This document shows positions 2,032 to 42,226 of a stretch of DNA of 64,000 nucleotides, piece by piece. A model generated the notes under the pieces. It made no database searches. It saw nothing but the letters and a program-made list of their open reading frames with translations, and was not told the DNA's origin. The stretch is taken from the IMG/VR virus record IMGVR_UViG_3300029908_000004, positions 62,001 to 126,000 of that record; one strand, given 5' to 3'. The position numbers and the translations under genes were made by a program. How positions within the stretch are numbered: position 1 is the first letter of the stretch; every line of letters begins with the position of its first letter.

Positions 2032-2108
2032 TGGTAGCTCCTCCTAGGGTCGAACTAGGCTATGCGGCTTATGAGACCGCCACTTTACCTACCATAAGTT
2101 AAAGAGCC
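2032..2108 (-). tRNA. tRNA with CAU anticodon (Met or Ile2)
   Basis: Minus strand GGCTCTT...AGGAGCT-A-CCA acceptor, anticodon arm GCGGT-CTCATAA-GCCGC, T-arm CTAG-TTCGACC-CTAG; encoded CCA. Confidence 0.9.
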
Positions 2109-3292: not shown

Positions 3293-3367
3293 TGGTCGGC
3301 TCGGCTGGTGTCGAACCAGCGACCTAACCATTATGAGCGGTTGGCTCTACCGTTGAGCTACGAGCCG
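3293..3367 (-). tRNA. tRNA with CAU anticodon (Ile2 or Met)
   Basis: Minus strand CGGCTCG-TAGCTCAACGGTAGAGC-C-AACCG-CTCATAA-TGGTT-AGGTC-GCTGG-TTCGACA-CCAGC-CGAGCCG-A-CCA; canonical cloverleaf. Confidence 0.95.
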
Positions 3368-11309: not shown

Positions 11310-12836
11310 TTACACGTCTTTTAGGACGGTGAATGAATCCTTTCGTTTCCTTCTATGACAATTTGTACACATTATGAACTCTTTTGTATCATTTTTACAA
11401 TTGTATTCTTCCCTGATAGTGGTTTTTACCATTCCATGAGGATAATTTATCTCATTACTGTTTTTATCCTTCATCCTAACCCCAGTAGTGAACATCATAG
11501 TTCCTTTACATTTGGGGCACTTTGCTGCTATACGGATAACCTTGGATTGGTCGGAGAAGAATCCAGTTTTCAGAAGTCTATTGACATGTTTATACCAAAC
11601 TTCACAGATTGCTTTCTTAATTGAATCTTTACCATAACTAGGGTTCTCTAGTTGATAGTCAAAAGCACGCTCCAACATTCTTTTATATTCATTACTGGGG
11701 GTGAATCCCCACTCGGTGAGATCGTCGCCAGTAACCAATGGTTTGGGGAATCCAAGAGTCTTAGCAGCAGTTATATACCCTATGGTATTCTCCATATTTA
11801 TAGAGATGATCTTAGCATTAACTAGAATCCATAGTAATTCTATAGCTCTGTTTATATTTGGCTTGTTGGCAAGCTTCCTTCTTTCACATAGTGAAGTAAG
11901 CCTATTAGACCTAAGATCAATTACTATTTGCACCATCTCTGAGATTGTATTTCTGTCTTCGTTAGAGAATTTGAGATATTTTAATACATCCCCAATATTC
12001 CAATATATACCAGTTGTATACAAAAGACAACACCATGCTAAGATTGGATCTTTAACTTGTCCAATCTTGTCGAAATTGACAGTTTGATCTACTATATTAA
12101 AAAGGGAATTTGGTTGTTGCTCATAGATTTTGGTGTATAAATTAGTTCTCTGAAGACAGAACAAAGCGTCACCGACGTGTTCCCCCGTTATGAGCTTTGT
12201 CATTTCGTCTCTAACACGTTCTCGCGAAACCCTAATCATCAAATTTGCATTATTACGAATTGCTCGTAATGTCTCAAATTCTATCTGAAACCCAAGTTGT
12301 GACACGAATCTAACAGCTCTTAACATTCGAAGAGGATCCTCTTGGAAACGAATGTTAGGGTCACCAATACAACCAATCCTTCGTATTGATATATCATATT
12401 TACCACCAACATAATCAATAACTTCCATTGACTCTGGGTTCATCAATATCCCATTCATCCTAAAATCTCTACGACCAGCGTCAATACATTCTTGATCAGT
12501 AAATATAACACTATCCGGTCTACGAAGGTCTGAATACTCAGTAGAATCACTTCTCAATGTAGCTACTTCTATGGAGTGATCTACACCATCTATATCAACA
12601 AGGACTTTTACAACTCCGAATTCTACTCCAATTGGAATATTGTGGGGAAATAGATCCATTACTTCATTGGGTTTAGCTGAAGTACATATATCAAAGTCTT
12701 TCGGTTCCTTGTTCATAAGAAGGTTTCTAACACACCTACCTACAAGGAAGACTTTGAAGTTATTTTGCTTTAACGTCTTAGCTACTTTCCTAGCAGCTTC
12801 TAAACTACTTATCTCTGGCATATATTCCTTGTTCAA
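11310..12836 (-). CDS. cca: tRNA nucleotidyltransferase (CCA-adding enzyme, class II) with C-terminal zinc ribbon
   Basis: VGRCVRN...KDFD, EVATLR, RRDF, EDPLRMLRAVRF, VSRERVRDEM motifs; C-terminal CPKC...CTNC. Confidence 0.9.
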   Translation of the reverse strand: MNKEYMPEISSLEAARKVAKTLKQNNFKVFLVGRCVRNLLMNKEPKDFDICTSAKPNEVMDLFPHNIPIGVEFGVVKVLVDIDGVDHSIEVATLRSDSTEYSDLRRPDSVIFTDQECIDAGRRDFRMNGILMNPESMEVIDYVGGKYDISIRRIGCIGDPNIRFQEDPLRMLRAVRFVSQLGFQIEFETLRAIRNNANLMIRVSRERVRDEMTKLITGEHVGDALFCLQRTNLYTKIYEQQPNSLFNIVDQTVNFDKIGQVKDPILAWCCLLYTTGIYWNIGDVLKYLKFSNEDRNTISEMVQIVIDLRSNRLTSLCERRKLANKPNINRAIELLWILVNAKIISINMENTIGYITAAKTLGFPKPLVTGDDLTEWGFTPSNEYKRMLERAFDYQLENPSYGKDSIKKAICEVWYKHVNRLLKTGFFSDQSKVIRIAAKCPKCKGTMMFTTGVRMKDKNSNEINYPHGMVKTTIREEYNCKNDTKEFIMCTNCHRRKRKDSFTVLKDV

Positions 12837-20912: not shown

Positions 20913-21467
20913 CTATTCCTTCTTCCGCCCCTCGTTCCCCTTGTTACTGTTGGAGACGATCTCACTGATCTGCGTAAAGTCATTCTCCTCCAACCCACGC
21001 TGCAACGCCTTCTGGAGTTTCGTGTGTTCTTTGAGCAGATTCTCCATTAGCGCTGCTTGCTCGGGATCGAACACAGGTTGACCGACTACTTTCTTGTTTC
21101 CATTCTCATCGAACGAGAAACCTGCTGGTTTCGGTTTGATACGCTTCCGCTCATGCTCGTTCTTCTCGATGAGTTCAAGAATGAGAGCAGTGGCATGAAC
21201 GTTCTTCTCGACTTCCTTCGCTGCCAAACCGTCAATGACAGCTTTCCTGACTACATCGCCGGTAGCTATCTTCTTGACTTCTTGGCGAACCGAAATAGAC
21301 GGAAGAACTGATTTGACAGCTTCGGTAATTCTAATGTCAGCCTTGTACGCCTTAACTTCAGACTGAGGTTCAGAAGAGGTAACTTCGTTACCAAGGGTCT
21401 CTGGGACTGGTTCATTCTGAGTCCCTTCTACTTCGGGAGATGGCTGATCCTTATCCTCTCGTCCCAT
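20913..21467 (-). CDS. hypothetical coiled-coil protein
   Basis: 184-aa ORF, translationally coupled (TAATG) to the upstream gene. Confidence 0.7.
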   Translation of the reverse strand: MGREDKDQPSPEVEGTQNEPVPETLGNEVTSSEPQSEVKAYKADIRITEAVKSVLPSISVRQEVKKIATGDVVRKAVIDGLAAKEVEKNVHATALILELIEKNEHERKRIKPKPAGFSFDENGNKKVVGQPVFDPEQAALMENLLKEHTKLQKALQRGLEENDFTQISEIVSNSNKGNEGRKKE

Positions 21468-21909
21468 TAAATTGTTCCTTTCGTGGGTAAAGGTTTAATC
21501 TTCCTTTGTTTGGACTTCTTCCTTTTCGTAGGCTTCCTGACGCACTGCTTGATACTTGCTTTGTCAGTCCCTTTCTCTTTGACTGGCTGTTCTTCAACAC
21601 AAGGCTTCTTACCACGTTGCTTCTCACGATAGAACGCAATAGCTGCCTCCACTACATCAATCTTTGAGTCCCAGTATTGTGCAGCAACTGGTTCATAAGC
21701 TTCTCTCCACAATAAGTACTTCGGTGTAACAAATTCTGGTACTGATGGTCTTTCTATGTGTAACTTTTCGATTTTCCTTAGTAGGTTTATATGATTCCCA
21801 ACTACCTCCAAGAATGACTCTTCAGCCTTATTAGATACTTCTATTTGGCTGTCTTTTCCGCTCTTCATCTACTCTAACCTTCTTTTCTATTACTACCACT
21901 TTGCACCTT

Positions 21910-25052: not shown

Positions 25053-25649
25053 TCAATAAGTAAAGAGCGTTATCAAGGTAATGATAGCTATTAAAGCTAT
25101 TGCTACCCCGTGGTACTCCCTTGGGCTAATATAGTAGTTACTACCAACGTACTCAGCGATTTTATAGTCCCTTATCTTTTTACCTTTGTCGTTGTAGTGC
25201 TCACCAATAACTACGGACCTAGTCATACACGTTTTCTTATATGACCATAGCCAAATTGATAGGGAAACAACCATGAACAGTAATCCCATTGATATATGTA
25301 CCAATATACCAATAAGACTATCGCCTATCAACTTCCATACTACTACAATAGCAGTTAATTTGCCAACTGGTGTCTGGGCAAAGTTGTTGGCTTGAATGTT
25401 AATAGCAGACATAGAATCATTGATTGCTACCCCAACTTCTTTTCCTACCCCCACCCAACTGTGAACTTCCGTCTTCACATCCGTCTTCTGGACTTGCTGT
25501 AGTTGATATTCTGTCAACAGACTTTTTGGGACTACTACGTGGTCTGTATCCTGACCTTGGCTCATCGTAGGTGTCAGTAGTAGCATTGATACGAACACCA
25601 AGGTTATCATTAGCCTTAGGCTCAATAACCTCTTCCTTAACTGGTTCAT
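25053..25649 (-). CDS. membrane protein
   Basis: Signal/TM segments; GKEVGVA...FAQTPVGKLT pattern common in phage membrane proteins. Confidence 0.7.
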   Translation of the reverse strand: MNQLRKRLLSLRLMITLVFVSMLLLTPTMSQGQDTDHVVVPKSLLTEYQLQQVQKTDVKTEVHSWVGVGKEVGVAINDSMSAINIQANNFAQTPVGKLTAIVVVWKLIGDSLIGILVHISMGLLFMVVSLSIWLWSYKKTCMTRSVVIGEHYNDKGKKIRDYKIAEYVGSNYYISPREYHGVAIALIAIITLITLFTY

Positions 25650-26004
25650 TTTCTCCCCTTATTCTCCACAACTCAGTCGCTTGACAAACATGGCCAAGCT
25701 GGCCAAATATATCACTTAGACCTGAAGCTTGTTTCAACACTAACAAAAGCTCAGGGTTCTCAGCGATGTACTCATCCCATAACTGTGAGTACAATTTGGT
25801 AACAGCTTCCATGTTTACTGCTTGTCTTCCTTTTGCTTGTCTCCAAGACAACCCAGTTGTCCCATCCTCGAAGATCTTGGCTGCTTGGTAAATTTCTTCA
25901 ATGGGCTTGTTACCACGACTTCGGATTCTAGCCCAGAACGCACTGAGCCTTTTGAAACCACGAGTTGAGCATTCTATAAATGGTGGATTACCATGTTTTA
26001 CCAA
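25417..26004 (-). CDS. hypothetical protein, possibly NADAR-like
   Basis: ECSTRG..RLSAFWA, IEEIYQAAK, LSDIFG, CQA..L; C-terminal part overlaps the next gene. Confidence 0.5.
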   Translation of the reverse strand: MVKHGNPPFIECSTRGFKRLSAFWARIRSRGNKPIEEIYQAAKIFEDGTTGLSWRQAKGRQAVNMEAVTKLYSQLWDEYIAENPELLLVLKQASGLSDIFGQLGHVCQATELWRIRGENEPVKEEVIEPKANDNLGVRINATTDTYDEPRSGYRPRSSPKKSVDRISTTASPEDGCEDGSSQLGGGRKRSWGSNQ

Positions 26005-26583
26005 CTCTCTTCCTCCTCAAAGATTCTTGTAAGCACGACGGAGTATAAACCAACCCTCTTCGTCTGAGACACCATCCAGCTCGTCTCCAAGCAACTCCAT
26101 TGAAGCAACTACTTTCTCGTGAGCTTCCTGATAAGTTTCTGAATCTTCTGCATGGAAGTTTTTGGCAAATCTACGGAAGGCAGAGACATCTCTGAGATCT
26201 GCGTCTGGTCTGCTCTTTTTTATTTCACGCAGTAGTTCAGCATCTGACATGTTACTAATCATCTTGACTTTCTCCATTCGGGAGCTTCAACCTTTAGCTA
26301 AAAATGTCCGCCAAAGGTTTCCTCTGTTCCTTGAACCAACTCATGTCTTTTCACACAGCCACCAGTACCAAACCTACATATACCACTAGAGTGACCATAT
26401 ACAACACACTCATCACCCGGTTTTCTTGGCATTGATTTCTTTATGAAGGAGAGTTCAGTCATAAGTGCGTTACACCTGTACTTATGGTCTTCGAGGATCA
26501 CGAAGCTACATACACACATCAAAATGATTAGTGTAATGAAGCCAATAAAGATAAGATTCATTGTAAGTCTCCTTGATCTAAGA

Positions 26584-26719
26584 TGTGCCTAGCAAGTATC
26601 GAACCTTGCATCCCCCCATTAAAAATGGCAAGGACTAATAGACAATGCATATCTATTAGCCGGTATCTTCCCTGTTAGTAAGTATGTCTAGAAAGGCTTA
26701 CTAATTAGACGATAGGCAC
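26584..26719 (-). ncRNA. tRNA-Lys(UUU)-like RNA with two inserted hairpins
   Basis: Acceptor GTGCCTA/TAGGCAC, D-like TCGTCTAATTAGTAAG, anticodon loop CCA-TTTTTAA-TGG, T-like GCAAG-GTTCGATA-CTTGC; about 136 nt; no encoded CCA. Confidence 0.6.
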
Positions 26720-26782
26720 ATCACGCCCAAATAAGTTAAGTAAAAGGTACTCTTACTTAACCATAGTGATTGTAACGATTTC

Positions 26783-27040
26783 CCATTGGAAATCCTCCTT
26801 GGCCAACCAGCGCGCATCGTGCGCAAACAAGATTTACAACCTTGCCAAGTTCGGAGGGTGGGATTAGCCTGAACGCTACCCTCTGTACGTTCCCAGCCCA
26901 TGTTCTATATGTCCGCTGAAGTCCAGAGCATGGTCAACTTCAACGTTAGCCACCGTCCCACGAACTGTCTTGTTCTAAAGGCTTCGTGACCGTGGCTTGC
27001 GGGTTGCTGGCTAGGCTAAGGGCACCTGAGTACAATGGAA
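26783..27040. ncRNA. putative structured ncRNA of about 260 nt
   Basis: GC-rich intergenic region with long-range closing stems and at least four internal hairpins. Confidence 0.55.
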
Positions 27041-27085
27041 CAGGCTTACTGTGGTAGCCACCACGCCCCTTCTCCGCAATCTCTT

Positions 27086-27541
27086 TTATCTTGGTTCCAA
27101 TCCTCTCTCTTTTAGGAGGACTCTCCAGCGAATTGATTCAATTGGATCAACGTAGGTAACGTTACACTCGCTACAAACACCTACTTTGGCGTTTTTCACA
27201 GTGAACAATACCCCGTTCTTAGCTGTTATCTCATATTCAGGAAGCACTCTTTCTATTATGTTTCCTCTGAAACATTCTAGGCAGAAGCCACCCCAAATAT
27301 GTATCTGTGGTTGGTTCGATTCGTTGGTTGGTGTTCCTTCCACTGCTGATGTACATACCTTCAGATCGTCTTCATCGAAGACGTACTCCGAGATAGCATA
27401 GGGAGGGCCATTGTACCAGCTTGGGTTATCACTCCTATCCAGTGGAATACCAATTATTACTCTTGTCCCGATGTCTGTGCATCTGAATGGGTTGTTATCA
27501 CAGTAGAATGTTTCACCAATCTTGAAGTCAGAGAGTATCAA
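27086..27541 (-). CDS. hypothetical protein with C-terminal YgiT/MqsA-type zinc finger
   Basis: CLEC...VKNAKVGVCSEC spacing matches the YgiT-type finger. Confidence 0.6.
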   Translation of the reverse strand: MILSDFKIGETFYCDNNPFRCTDIGTRVIIGIPLDRSDNPSWYNGPPYAISEYVFDEDDLKVCTSAVEGTPTNESNQPQIHIWGGFCLECFRGNIIERVLPEYEITAKNGVLFTVKNAKVGVCSECNVTYVDPIESIRWRVLLKERGLEPR

Positions 27542-27553
27542 TATTACCTCCTG

Positions 27554-28042
27554 CTAATCTTCTCGGGAGGTGAATAGGCTATCAAGCCCATCACCATAGA
27601 TCATCTTTGCTTCTATCTGTTGTAGCTCAGCAGGAGTGAATTTGACGAAGGATTCAGTCTCCACTTTCTTGTCTTGAACCGCTTTGCTATACAAAACAGA
27701 TTTAAGCTTCGTCTTTCCACCTGCTACAGCTTTACCATCTACCATGAAAACATAGGAGTCGGCGCTGTAGTCAGATGTTGGTGAATGAACAATCAGTTTA
27801 ATCTTTCCTGACTTGCCACCGGTTATACTATCGGAGTGGTACTCACGATTGTAACCGTTTGCACATTTCTTTCTGTTATCCCTTTTCCAATCTTCACTAC
27901 GTTTCATCCGTAGTTTCAGATCTCCCTTGAGGACCTTTCCTCCAGTTTTCTGATACTCTGGGTAAATCAAATCCATTAAGCCGTCGTCTACCCACGTTGA
28001 TACATGGTTCCTTACTGATTCACTGATTCCTTTTCCACTCAA
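27554..28042 (-). CDS. hypothetical protein
   Basis: 162-aa ORF with AGGAGAAGG RBS. Confidence 0.65.
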   Translation of the reverse strand: MSGKGISESVRNHVSTWVDDGLMDLIYPEYQKTGGKVLKGDLKLRMKRSEDWKRDNRKKCANGYNREYHSDSITGGKSGKIKLIVHSPTSDYSADSYVFMVDGKAVAGGKTKLKSVLYSKAVQDKKVETESFVKFTPAELQQIEAKMIYGDGLDSLFTSRED

Positions 28043-41775: not shown

Positions 41776-42226
41776 GTCTCTCCATCCTAATACACCGATA
41801 TCATCTCGTGTGTAAAGACTTTAAGGTTTGTGGTGGTATATTCACACCACTAATCCCAGCTACTCACAGCTGTAAGCTGTTGTAATTGTTGATGTTGCTT
41901 CACAAGTACACTGGTCTTGGGCCCGTAGCATGTACCGGAAGATAGGCCCTCACGGGACGCTACCGACTCTCATCGGGGTGAGCGAGACTCACCTACTATA
42001 CAAGCTTGGACACTTGTATAGTTTCGAATTATCATCTATTCACTAGATATTGGACAATCTAGCTACTGTTTATCCTATACTATATAATAGTAAGGGGACA
42101 AAAGAATCGCCCCTACAGGTAGACAGCAAGGAAGCATCCCTACTGAACACCGACTACGCCTAACAGACGGCTCATACTATTATGGTAGTACCTATGGATC
42201 GGTACAATATGACCTCTTTGTCTCTT

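What the first reader, a model, noticed from the sequence alone, without database searches (positions are those of the whole stretch)
26584..26719. tRNA-Lys(UUU)-like RNA expanded by two extra arms
Seen on minus: acceptor stem GTGCCTA/TAGGCAC (extendable to 10 bp); D-arm-like start TCGTCTAATTAGTAAG with a hairpin (TTAGTAAG...CTTACTAA) grown out of the D loop; a second inserted hairpin (GGCTAATAGA...TCTATTAGTC) before the anticodon arm; loop TT-TTT-AA; and a GTTCGAT T-loop. About 136 nt, no encoded CCA, although the phage carries a CCA enzyme. Established: tRNA-Lys(UUU) is the target of the PrrC anticodon nuclease. Inference: a tRNA mimic or decoy, a non-canonically spliced tRNA, or a decaying tRNA.
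Basis: partly seen in the sequence, partly recalled or inferred. Interest (0 to 1): 0.62.

Follow-up and report, generated by a model that had tools for sequence, protein, structure and literature searches.

The report
Hairpin-expanded tRNA-shaped phage RNA
A 215-kb peat phage carries a tRNA-derived RNA with an extra hairpin in its D-loop; related phages conserve it and it is abundant in environmental RNA, but it is probably not a working lysine tRNA.

Summary
Window 26584-26719 (minus strand) folds into a cloverleaf with two inserted hairpins (MFE z = -4.66). ARAGORN and Rfam do not call it. A covariance model built from it found homologues in three related phage lineages. Across the four sequences, 100% of 114 pair cells are standard pairs and 20 of 29 pairs show compensatory changes. 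The D-loop hairpin (H1) is conserved in all four. The second hairpin (H2) occurs only in this phage. The 'anticodon' is not conserved: UUU, UAU, CAG, UCU. All four copies lack CCA and have a non-canonical T-loop and an acceptor helix of at least 8 bp. The phage's 30 ordinary tRNAs all encode CCA and include a normal tRNA-Lys(UUU). In three low-coverage metatranscriptomes, only 26584/5 to about 27314 is covered within the 2.4 kb laid. Three contigs end at acceptor position 72/73, unspliced and without CCA. It is therefore neither decaying nor visibly spliced. The specific tRNA-Lys/PrrC decoy idea has no comparative support. My best reading, at low-moderate confidence, is a non-decoding tRNA-shaped module. 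Its 3' end would be cut like that of a CCA-less tRNA precursor, leaving a stable cap on the upstream transcript. A trans-acting mimic or a non-canonical decoding tRNA remain open. It is a new variant of tRNA-like RNA.

The parts
26584..26719 (-). The whole tRNA-shaped element, 136 nt, from G1 (26719) to A73 (26584)
   Evidence: Fold z = -4.66. CM R1/R2 self-hit and homologues. Covariation.
26713..26722 (-). 5' strand of the acceptor helix (GUGCCUA, 26719-26713) plus leader GAU (26722-26720), which pairs with the trailer
   Evidence: The pair between position -1 and position 73 is Watson-Crick in all 4 members (UA, CG, CG, GC, columns 4/148).
26582..26591 (-). 3' strand of the acceptor helix (UAGGCAC, 26591-26585), A73 (26584) and trailer UC; no CCA
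   Evidence: RNA contigs of three runs end at 26584 or 26585.
26665..26710 (-). D-arm: stem GUCU (26710-26707) / AGAU (26668-26665); loop with A14 A15, hairpin H1, then GGG-A
   Evidence: D-stem columns 14-17/62-65 are paired in 4 of 4 members. R2 aligns ordinary tRNAs here with H1 deleted.
26675..26704 (-). H1: 8-bp hairpin with a 14-nt loop, inserted in the D-loop; the family-defining expansion
   Evidence: All 8 pairs change on both sides among the 4 members (helix 3). No other copy in the genome.
26633..26661 (-). H2: 12-bp hairpin with a 5-nt loop, inserted between position 26 and the anticodon stem; specific to this phage
   Evidence: Absent from L024, L026 and L183 (29-nt gap in alignments A5/A7). 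No other copy in the genome.
26612..26632 (-). Anticodon-like arm: stem with one G.G mismatch, 7-nt loop UUUUUAA (26625-26619), 'anticodon' UUU (26623-26621)
   Evidence: The loop is 7 nt with AA at positions 37-38 in 4 of 4 members. The triplet varies: UUU/UAU/CAG/UCU.
26592..26609 (-). T-arm: 5-bp stem GCAAG/CUUGC with the 8-nt loop GUUCGAUA
   Evidence: T-loops are 8, 8, 8 and 6 nt in the four members and never the canonical 7. The closing G-C pair is invariant.
26720..27085 (-). ORF-poor leader between the 151-aa ORF (27086-27541) and the element; transcribed with the element and only weakly structured
   Evidence: No gene was called here by the source annotation. RNA contigs are 26585-26875, 26852-27021, 27011-27314, 26912-27298 and 26919-27241. 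Fold z = -1.7 and -1.0.
11310..12836 (-). CCA-adding-type nucleotidyltransferase gene; possible partner, link not shown
   Evidence: PF01743 95 bits. NF009814 241.8 bits, PF12627, PF13735.

Best explanation
The element is a tRNA gene derivative that keeps the tRNA core but carries a conserved hairpin grown out of the D-loop. This phage alone has a second hairpin at the D/anticodon junction.

It is transcribed on the minus strand as part of a longer RNA. I infer that it is cut at its 3' end like a CCA-less tRNA precursor, by a host RNase Z-type activity just after position 73, and that it stays without CCA.

My best reading of its role is that it does not decode. It would act in cis as a tRNA-shaped 3'-end-forming and stabilising module between cistrons. 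The compact tRNA fold caps the upstream RNA against 3' exonucleases and separates it from the downstream message.

Four family features are those expected to divert it from RNase P, aminoacylation and the ribosome: no CCA, a base-paired -1:73 position with leader/trailer pairing, a hairpin at the elbow, and an abnormal T-loop.

Shown: the tRNA-derived fold, its conservation, its presence in RNA libraries, and the position where RNA contigs end.

Inferred: the enzyme, the absence of charging, and the cis-stabiliser role.

Confidence that this is a conserved, expressed, tRNA-derived structured RNA is about 0.9. The figure below is for the cis processing/stability mechanism.
For: Fold and homology
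- The fold has z = -4.66.
- A CM built from the element finds L024:14332-14443 (29.9 bits), L026:18348-18461 (20.5 bits) and L183:3464-3567 (34.5 bits with R2).
- On the four-member alignment, 100% of 114 cells are paired and 20 of 29 pairs are compensatory. No shuffle of 500 reaches this, and slid controls give 37-50%.
- The family model also hits ordinary tRNAs at 25-35 bits, so the family is tRNA-derived.

Expression and 3' end
- In RNA runs X19, X20 and X21, only 26584/5 to about 27314 of the 2.4 kb laid is covered.
- Their 3'-most contigs are 26585-26875, 26585-26869 and 26584-26869. They end at acceptor position 72/73 with no extra letters at that end.
- Each of these contigs is the deepest piece in its run.
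- Run X7 has one contig across 26126-27857, so read-through RNA exists and the end is not a terminator.
- No terminator-like site is found there.

Features against decoding
- None of the 4 members encodes CCA, whereas all 30 ARAGORN tRNAs of this phage end in CCA.
- The -1:73 pair is Watson-Crick in 4 of 4 members.
- The loop triplet varies, and a canonical tRNA-Lys(UUU) already exists at G000:C1:28660-28735.
- T-loops are 8, 8, 8 and 6 nt.
- With the hairpins deleted in silico, ARAGORN at default threshold calls only one of the four.

Position
- In L024, L026 and L183 the element starts 3-7 nt after the stop codon of a conserved gene (phrog_2971). It lies just upstream of the next gene in the adenylosuccinate synthetase region.
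Against: - The RNA evidence is from assembled contigs, which cannot show true ends, strand or local depth. A graph branch, for example read-through versus tailed molecules, could also end contigs at 72/73.
- Contigs crossing the 5' boundary show only that some molecules keep the leader. A 136-nt processed species could still dominate.
- A pure processing signal needs neither a 7-nt anticodon-like loop with A37-A38, kept in 4 of 4 members, nor U34/U36 in 3 of 4, nor the H1 hairpin.
- There are only four members, and the alignment was fitted by the model.
- RNase Z is not encoded by the phage and the host is unknown.
Confidence: 0.35

Rival explanations
1. Trans-acting tRNA mimic or decoy. The processed, CCA-less, blunt-ended tRNA-shaped RNA accumulates and occupies a tRNA-binding factor. 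That factor could be a host tRNA-targeting defence nuclease, a modification enzyme, or a phage RNA-repair protein. H1 would serve as a handle or as a block to entering translation.
For: - It is abundant and stable in three metatranscriptomes.
- The whole L-shape geometry is kept, including a 7-nt loop of pattern Y-Y-U-N-U-A-A in 3 of 4 members.
- There is no CCA, and the acceptor helix is at least 8 bp, leaving no single-stranded 3' end.
- The phage carries an RNA-repair-type toolkit: Ro60 and a CCA-adding-type enzyme. This fits a conflict over tRNAs, as reviewed in PMC7824862.
- UUU duplicates the phage's real tRNA-Lys(UUU).
Against: - The loop triplet differs among orthologues (UUU/UAU/CAG/UCU), so there is no common target anticodon.
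- No nuclease or partner is identified, and neighbouring genes are uninformative.
- No mature 5' end is shown.
- The distribution is patchy even among close relatives.
Confidence: 0.25
2. A working but non-canonical decoding tRNA. After RNase P/Z processing and CCA addition by the phage or host enzyme, it is charged according to its anticodon (Lys here) and decodes. The extra arm(s) project from the elbow and hinge without blocking function, and might make it resistant to host tRNA-targeting defences.
For: - The tertiary-core nucleotides are kept: U8, A14, A15-U48, G18G19 in 3 of 4 members, and G53-C61.
- The loop is 7 nt with pyrimidines at 32-33 and A37.
- Three of the four triplets (UUU, UAU, UCU) read A-rich codons of the kind phages often supply.
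- With the hairpins removed, each member is 65-77 nt. ARAGORN then calls Arg(tct) at default threshold, and Ile(tat) and Lys(ttt) at 90% threshold.
- A73 with UUU fits LysRS identity rules (general knowledge).
- The phage has a CCA-adding-type enzyme although its 30 tRNAs encode CCA.
- Engineered hairpin-tagged tRNAs can be translationally active (abstract of PMC7590224).
Against: - No CCA is seen on the RNA contigs.
- All four T-loops are non-canonical.
- T-stem length varies (5 or 6 bp), and the acceptor helix is at least 8 bp.
- The anticodon stem has a G.G mismatch here, a C.A mismatch in L026, and only 3-4 bp in L183.
- Discriminators fit the anticodon only in this phage.
- It is redundant with the canonical tRNA-Lys(UUU).
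- A positional orthologue that changes amino-acid identity three times would be costly for a decoder.
Confidence: 0.17
3. A Y-RNA-type partner of the phage Ro60 (TROVE) protein, with the long terminal helix as the Ro-binding stem and the tRNA-like part as the effector module.
For: - The phage encodes a Ro60 orthologue at G000:C1:57659-58603 (132 bits).
- Bacterial and phage Y RNAs contain tRNA-like domains (PMC4201824).
- D. radiodurans Yrn1 is described there as having its T and D arms oriented differently from YrlA.
Against: - The element is about 30 kb from the Ro60 gene.
- Rfam YrlA does not match it, even at E <= 10.
- It has the normal, not the permuted, tRNA topology.
- The GNCGAA(N)G motif is absent from the 5' strand.
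- A better YrlA-like candidate, with the permuted T-arm, closed acceptor and D-arm order, lies about 5 kb from Ro60 at C1:52280-52399 (26.6 bits).
Confidence: 0.05
4. A dead tRNA gene (pseudo-tRNA) that picked up insertions and has no function.
For: - It is not called by ARAGORN or Rfam.
- There is a mismatch in the anticodon stem, an abnormal T-loop and no CCA.
- The distribution among relatives is patchy.
Against: - 20 of 29 pairs are maintained by compensatory changes across four lineages, including all 8 pairs of the inserted hairpin.
- The same unusual features recur in all members.
- It lies in the only stretch of the 2.4 kb laid that three RNA runs cover.
Confidence: 0.04

Closest known systems
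Canonical phage/bacterial tRNA (Rfam RF00005)
   Same: - Cloverleaf with a 7-bp acceptor, a 4-bp D-stem, a 7-nt anticodon-type loop, a 4-nt variable loop and a T-arm with UCGA.
- U8, A14, A15-U48, G18G19 and G53-C61 are present.
- It is embedded between ORFs in an operon, like the phage's other tRNAs.
- The family CM cross-hits real tRNAs at 25-35 bits.
- The D-arm sequence resembles that of Glu/Gln-type tRNAs (partly my own reading).
   Different: - A 30-nt hairpin sits inside the D-loop, and here a further 29-nt hairpin follows position 26.
- The T-loop is 8 nt.
- There is no CCA, whereas all 30 tRNAs of the phage encode it.
- Position -1 pairs with position 73.
- The anticodon is not conserved among orthologues.
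- It is below threshold for Rfam and ARAGORN.
tRNA-like 3'-end modules such as MALAT1 mascRNA / MEN-beta, and plant-virus 3' tRNA-like structures (from general knowledge)
   Same: A tRNA-shaped fold sits at the 3' end of a longer transcript. tRNA end-processing enzymes act on it, and it determines the stability of that transcript.
   Different: - Those are eukaryotic or RNA-virus systems.
- In MALAT1, RNase P cuts 5' of the tRNA-like part to make the lncRNA end. [quoted passage not shown]
- Viral tRNA-like structures are aminoacylated and end in CCA.
YrlA / bacterial Y RNAs (Rfam RF02553; PMC4201824)
   Same: A non-decoding RNA with a tRNA-like domain, occurring in phages that carry Ro60. This phage has Ro60.
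   Different: YrlA is circularly permuted (T-arm, closed acceptor hairpin, D-arm), carries a Ro-binding stem and lies next to rsr. The element has normal tRNA order, no RF02553 match and lies 30 kb from Ro60. A separate YrlA-like candidate sits near Ro60.
tmRNA tRNA-like domain
   Same: An acceptor stem plus T-arm enclosing extra structure. ARAGORN labels the element 'tmRNA', but only at a 70% threshold at which it also reports obvious junk.
   Different: There is no G3.U70, no CCA, no long P2 helix or pseudoknots and no credible tag frame. It is not called at the default threshold.
Archaeal tRNAs with introns at non-canonical positions; engineered aptamer-tagged tRNAs (PMC7590224) and tRNA scaffolds
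   Same: Extra helical RNA is inserted into loops of a tRNA body. The engineered versions show that a tRNA fold tolerates added hairpins.
   Different: Archaeal inserts are removed at bulge-helix-bulge motifs by a splicing endonuclease that bacteria lack, and no spliced form is seen here. The engineered cases are artificial. A 2020 review of natural non-canonical tRNAs lists no D-loop hairpin insertion (PMC7609411).

Membership tests
tRNA (RF00005 / ARAGORN) | Cloverleaf: acceptor, D, anticodon and T helices supported by covariation | tested here: met
   Four-member alignment A7: 100% of cells paired, 20 of 29 pairs compensatory. Three-member A5: 98.9%.
tRNA (RF00005 / ARAGORN) | Conserved core nucleotides (U8, A14, R15-Y48, G18G19, G53-C61) | tested here: met
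   All present in the window copy. G18G19 is present in 3 of 4 members; the others in 4 of 4 (alignments).
tRNA (RF00005 / ARAGORN) | Reaches the family's detection threshold (Rfam 29 bits; ARAGORN default) | tested here: not met
   No RF00005 hit even at E <= 10. Not called by ARAGORN. With the hairpins deleted, ARAGORN calls it only at a 90% threshold.
tRNA (RF00005 / ARAGORN) | 7-nt T-loop and a D-loop without a helix; length about 70-95 nt | tested here: not met
   8-nt T-loop, 30-nt hairpin in the D-loop, 136 nt in total.
tRNA (RF00005 / ARAGORN) | 3' CCA (encoded or added) and aminoacylation | tested here: inconclusive
   CCA is not encoded and is not on the RNA contig ends. Contigs cannot exclude a tailed minority, and charging is not testable here.
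YrlA / Y RNA | Match to RF02553; permuted order T-arm, closed acceptor hairpin, D-arm; Ro-binding stem motif | tested here: not met
   No RF02553 hit on the element. It has normal tRNA order. The GNCGAA(N)G motif of PMC4201824 is absent from the 5' strand.
YrlA / Y RNA | Encoded next to the Ro60 (rsr) gene | tested here: not met
   Ro60 is at C1:57659-58603 and the element at C1:88584-88719, about 30 kb apart.
YrlA / Y RNA | Bound by Ro60 | not testable with these tools
   Needs an immunoprecipitation.
tmRNA | Detected by ARAGORN at default threshold; G3.U70; CCA; pseudoknots and tag reading frame | tested here: not met
   Called only at -ps70, among junk calls. The acceptor has G3-C70, and there is no CCA.
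Intron-containing tRNA (group I or bulge-helix-bulge) | A spliced form exists; intron matches a known class | tested here: not met
   No joints in 4 RNA runs, and contigs run through H1 and H2. No intron family in Rfam matches. Rare spliced forms cannot be excluded from contigs.
tRNA-like 3'-end processing/stability module | tRNA-shaped fold at the 3' end of a longer, stable transcript, with the end at the discriminator | tested here: inconclusive
   Three RNA runs have contigs that begin 150-290 nt or more upstream and end at 26584/26585, which is position 73/72. This is consistent with the feature, but contigs do not prove ends.
tRNA-like 3'-end processing/stability module | Cleavage by RNase Z/P; stabilisation of the upstream RNA | not testable with these tools
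   Needs in vitro cleavage and decay assays.

The most novel reading that the evidence does not exclude
A natural family of 'expanded' tRNAs. The tRNA body carries an additional helical arm on the D-loop and is either still charged and used in translation, or acts in trans as a tRNA-shaped decoy against tRNA-targeting host defences. On the decoding version, CCA would be supplied by the phage's own CCA-adding enzyme and identity would be set by a freely changing anticodon. Either would be a tRNA architecture not recorded in the surveys of non-canonical tRNAs that I could read.
Probability: 0.2. Interest if true: 0.85.

Novelty: new variant of a known kind. Interest (0 to 1): 0.6.

Why it matters
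tRNA architecture is among the most constrained in biology. The natural exceptions I found recorded are reductions (mitochondria), altered helix lengths (tRNA-Sec, allo-tRNAs) or long variable arms. I found no record of a helix growing out of the D-loop.

Here such a form is kept by selection in several large phages and is abundant in environmental RNA. Standard tRNA finders and Rfam miss it, so similar elements may be overlooked elsewhere.

Depending on which reading is right, it gives one of three things:
- a bacterial-virus counterpart of tRNA-like 3'-end modules;
- a new kind of tRNA mimic in the phage-host conflict over tRNAs;
- a natural precedent for hairpin-tagged functional tRNAs.

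Each reading can be tested with simple RNA biochemistry.

Tried and rejected
Searches that found no relatives
- blastn and megablast against INPHARED phages found no match.
- The exact T-arm/acceptor pattern in viral contigs gave 0 hits.
- The single ligase protein in viral contigs found no relatives.
- nhmmer and blastn of the element and the intergenic region against 10 ligase-anchored loci found nothing.
- Handles for JGI metagenome loci are not held.

Searches for more family members
- A degenerate family pattern in viral contigs gave 5 chance matches, none confirmed by the CM.
- The same pattern in metagenome contigs gave 67 stretches. The only CM-positive ones were ordinary tandem tRNAs, and the collection does not contain the samples that hold L024 and L026.
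- 80 purA-anchored viral loci yielded only ordinary tRNAs.
- The whole related genomes G001-G004 yielded only ordinary tRNAs.
- L023, L101, L102, L189-L195 have no member.

Ideas tested and dropped
- H1/H2 as copies of a repeated mobile hairpin: there are no other copies in the genome.
- The upstream intergenic region as part of a large known ncRNA (group I/II intron, GOLLD/ROOL, RNase P, tmRNA): no Rfam hit at E <= 10, and weak fold z-scores.
- Homology between that region and the 312-nt gap of L189/L192: only a 10-nt match.
- Neighbouring proteins as functional clues: no informative Pfam or PHROG hits.
- Phage-encoded RNase Z or RtcB: absent.
- Other expanded tRNA-like elements in this genome: a heuristic scan found only the element and one non-tRNA hairpin region.

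Handling notes
- No alternative genetic code was used.

Full report
**Where the element sits.** The window is bases 62001-126000 of a 215,291-bp virus record from peat and permafrost metagenomes. Genes around the finding are on the minus strand. The element (window 26584-26719, minus) lies at the 3' end of a gap of about 520 nt in which the source annotation calls no gene. The gap is bounded by a 151-aa ORF (27086-27541) and an 87-aa ORF (26298-26561). The 151-aa ORF looks like a real protein. Its N-terminal half is a widespread small domain, and its C-terminal half has two CxxC pairs.

**Checking the observation.**
- a 7-bp acceptor GUGCCUA/UAGGCAC, extendable to 10 bp by leader GAU and trailer AUC;
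- U8-C9 and a 4-bp D-stem GUCU/AGAU;
- a D-loop that starts AA, then holds an 8-bp hairpin (H1, 26704-26675), then GGG-A;
- a 12-bp hairpin (H2, 26661-26633) between position 26 and the anticodon stem;
- an anticodon-type arm with the 7-nt loop UUUUUAA;
- a 4-nt variable loop;
- a T-arm GCAAG-GUUCGAUA-CUUGC, whose loop is 8 nt rather than 7;
- A73 with no CCA after it.

RNAfold gives the same multiloop with z = -4.66, and 0 of 200 shuffles fold as well. ARAGORN and Rfam do not report it, even at E <= 10.

The phage has 30 ARAGORN tRNAs between 24 and 65 kb. All of them have an encoded CCA, and they include a normal tRNA-Lys(UUU) and a tRNA-Lys(CUU). It also has a CCA-adding-type nucleotidyltransferase at window 11310-12836.

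**Relatives.** Known phages have nothing similar at the DNA level. The neighbouring DNA ligase has only distant matches to large Escherichia, Vibrio and Salmonella phages (about 26% identity). It has many metagenomic relatives at 45-57% identity.

A covariance model built from the single sequence (R1) found homologues in two of the nearer relatives: L024:14332-14443 (29.9 bits, identical in L025) and L026:18348-18461 (20.5 bits). A family model (R2) then found a fourth lineage, L183:3464-3567, identical in five more contigs (34.5 bits).

No further members turned up in any of the following:
- four complete related phage genomes;
- pattern scans of the viral and metagenome collections;
- 80 purA-anchored viral loci;
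- other ligase- or phrog_2971-anchored loci.

The family is therefore real but patchy. R2 hits ordinary tRNAs at 25-35 bits with the H1 segment deleted. That is a reciprocal sign that the family derives from tRNA.

**What is conserved.** On the four-member alignment (A7), 100% of 114 pair cells are standard pairs and 20 of 29 pairs change on both sides. No shuffle of 500 reaches this, and sliding the partners gives 37-50% paired. The three-member result is 98.9%. The alignment was fitted by the model and holds only four sequences, so these figures are supportive, not final.

Shared by all four members:
- U8-C9 and the D-stem GUYU/AGRY;
- A14 A15 followed by a hairpin of unrelated sequence (all 8 modelled pairs covary);
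- a 7-nt loop ending in AA;
- a variable loop ending in AU;
- an invariant G-C pair closing the T-loop;
- a non-canonical T-loop (8, 8, 8 and 6 nt);
- no CCA;
- a Watson-Crick pair between position -1 and position 73 (UA, CG, CG, GC), which makes an acceptor helix of at least 8 bp.

Not shared:
- H2 occurs only in this phage.
- The loop triplet varies: UUU here, UAU, CAG and UCU in the others.
- G18G19 is a single G in L183.
- The anticodon stem has a G.G mismatch here, a C.A mismatch in L026, and only 3-4 bp in L183.

With the hairpins removed in silico the members are 65-77 nt. ARAGORN then calls one of them at its default threshold and two more at 90%. H1 and H2 have no other copies in the genome, so they are not a repeated mobile hairpin.

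**Position in the genome.** In L024, L026 and L183 the element starts 3-7 nt after the stop codon of a conserved gene of unknown function (phrog_2971; more than 1000 homologues). It lies just upstream of the next gene in the adenylosuccinate synthetase region. In this phage that junction holds a 74-aa ORF instead, and the element sits about 2.4 kb upstream of the ligase.

**Expression.** I laid Logan contigs of four metatranscriptomic runs on window 25600-28000. In the three runs with little phage signal, only 26584/5 to about 27314 is covered and the flanking ORFs have no coverage. DNA carry-over would not give that pattern.

The 3'-most contigs are 26585-26875, 26585-26869 and 26584-26869. 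All three end at acceptor position 72/73 with no unaligned letters at that end. Each is the deepest piece in its run. They pass through H1, H2 and the 5' boundary of the element without gaps or joints.

The fourth run has one contig across 26126-27857. Read-through RNA therefore exists, and the boundary is not a terminator. No terminator-like site is predicted there.

Three caveats apply, as the tool itself states. Contigs cannot prove ends, strand or local depth. A de Bruijn branch, for example read-through versus tailed molecules, would also end contigs at that point. Rare variants are dropped.

Within those limits, the RNA is made, is selectively abundant, is not visibly spliced, shows no CCA, and has a boundary exactly where a tRNA 3' end would be. 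The upstream 360 nt is only weakly structured (z = -1.7 and -1.0) and matches no Rfam family.

**Interpretation.** Decay is excluded by the compensatory conservation and the expression. Splicing has no support.

A dedicated tRNA-Lys(UUU) decoy has no comparative support, because the triplet is not conserved. A lineage-specific decoy cannot be excluded.

A normal decoding role is unlikely, for these reasons:
- no CCA is encoded in any of the 4 members, against 30 of 30 for the phage's real tRNAs, and none is seen on the RNA contigs;
- the T-loops are abnormal and the T-stem length varies;
- the acceptor helix is at least 8 bp;
- the anticodon stems are imperfect;
- the discriminators fit the anticodon only here;
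- it is redundant with the real tRNA-Lys(UUU).

The family-specific features are the ones expected to direct a tRNA-shaped RNA to RNase Z and away from RNase P, synthetases and the ribosome. CCA is an anti-determinant for RNase Z (general knowledge). I therefore favour, at modest confidence, a non-decoding tRNA-shaped module that forms and protects the 3' end of the upstream RNA and uncouples it from the downstream cistron.

This reading does not explain why a 7-nt loop of pattern Y-Y-U-N-U-A-A and the H1 hairpin are kept. That keeps the trans-acting mimic and the 'expanded functional tRNA' readings alive.

The Ro60/Y-RNA idea was worth testing, because the phage encodes Ro60 and Y RNAs mimic tRNA (PMC4201824). 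It is weak. The element is 30 kb from the Ro60 gene, has normal topology and does not match YrlA. A separate YrlA-like candidate with the typical permuted order lies about 5 kb from Ro60.

**Comparison with known systems and novelty.** The element works like a tRNA-like structure and derives from a tRNA. It fails the operational membership tests for tRNA, YrlA and tmRNA (see Membership tests).

I found no description of a natural tRNA or tRNA mimic with a helix in the D-loop. The 2020 review of non-canonical tRNAs lists none (PMC7609411). A 2026 preprint describes three unrelated families of bacterial tRNA mimics. Engineered hairpin-tagged tRNAs exist (PMC7590224).

I rate it a new variant of a known kind, with interest 0.6. 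The structure and expression are solid, and the function is open.

Noticed in passing
G000:C1:52280-52399 (minus) = L021:2280-2399; outside the window: A YrlA-like (Y RNA) candidate about 5 kb from the phage Ro60/TROVE gene (C1:57659-58603). It matches RF02553 at 26.6 bits (gathering score 69), E 0.0019 in a local search. It has the typical order of T-arm, closed acceptor-like hairpin and D-arm, and lies in an ORF-poor stretch.
   Followed up: partly
L026:18464-18570 (+): A second tRNA-like sequence directly 3' of the L026 family member. It was annotated as part of a 71-aa ORF. It matches RF00005 at 25.4 bits (below the 29-bit threshold) and is about 107 nt. It has a canonical UUCGAAU T-loop, a D-loop of about 42 nt, a 10-bp leader/trailer-extended acceptor and no CCA. 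The cloverleaf-constrained fold is -37.3 kcal/mol against an MFE of -41.4. It may be a more divergent tandem copy.
   Followed up: partly
L008:17005-17135 and L010:17220-17350 (+): Related phages carry a tRNA of about 130 nt with encoded CCA, canonical D- and T-arms and a variable region of about 58 nt. ARAGORN does not call it. Expanded tRNAs may be a wider habit of this phage group.
   Followed up: partly
L189:3443-3754, L190, L191, L192:968-1280: At the position where L024, L026 and L183 carry the element, after the phrog_2971 homologue, these contigs have a 312-nt GC-rich stretch with no called gene. It has no Rfam match and no significant similarity to the window's intergenic region.
   Followed up: partly
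window 26757-26800 (minus): A mini-ORF of 9 codons (MGNRYNHYG*) sits behind a perfect AAGGAGG Shine-Dalgarno sequence in the leader upstream of the element. Its AUG lies in the loop of a small hairpin, and a 25-nt hairpin (26760-26736) overlaps its stop codon. It is not present in the homologues.
   Followed up: no
window 26869-26919 (minus): RNA contigs break here in all three low-coverage runs: 26869/26875 on one side and 26912/26919 on the other. In X20 an Illumina adapter abuts 26912. This suggests a preferred RNA end or a cleavage site about 150-190 nt upstream of the element.
   Followed up: no
window 2032-2108 and 3293-3367 (minus); G000:C1:24058-65367: The phage has 30 tRNA genes scattered among small ORFs over 41 kb, all with encoded CCA. 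ARAGORN called no tRNA-His. Two tRNA-Met(CAU) lie in the window.
   Followed up: yes
G000:C1:26145-26347 (minus); outside the window: With introns allowed, ARAGORN calls a 'tRNA-Tyr(ata)' with a 104-nt intron between two tRNA-Leu genes. It may be an artefact or another odd tRNA-like element.
   Followed up: no
window 41985-42100 (minus): An ORF-free, hairpin-rich stretch (z = -3.4) was picked up by my heuristic acceptor/T-arm scan. It does not fold as a tRNA.
   Followed up: partly
L009:4950-5180 (+): An ORF-free gap in a 215-kb relative has a 12-bp terminal helix enclosing several hairpins and a GCAAGUUCGAUCC T-loop-like motif. R1 and R2 do not match it.
   Followed up: no
L102:1242-2498 and 21336-21659: A related phage contig carries RtcB and a PolyA_pol/CCA-type enzyme near the ligase. 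G000 has Ro60 and the CCA-type enzyme but no RtcB. The RNA-repair gene sets differ among these relatives.
   Followed up: no
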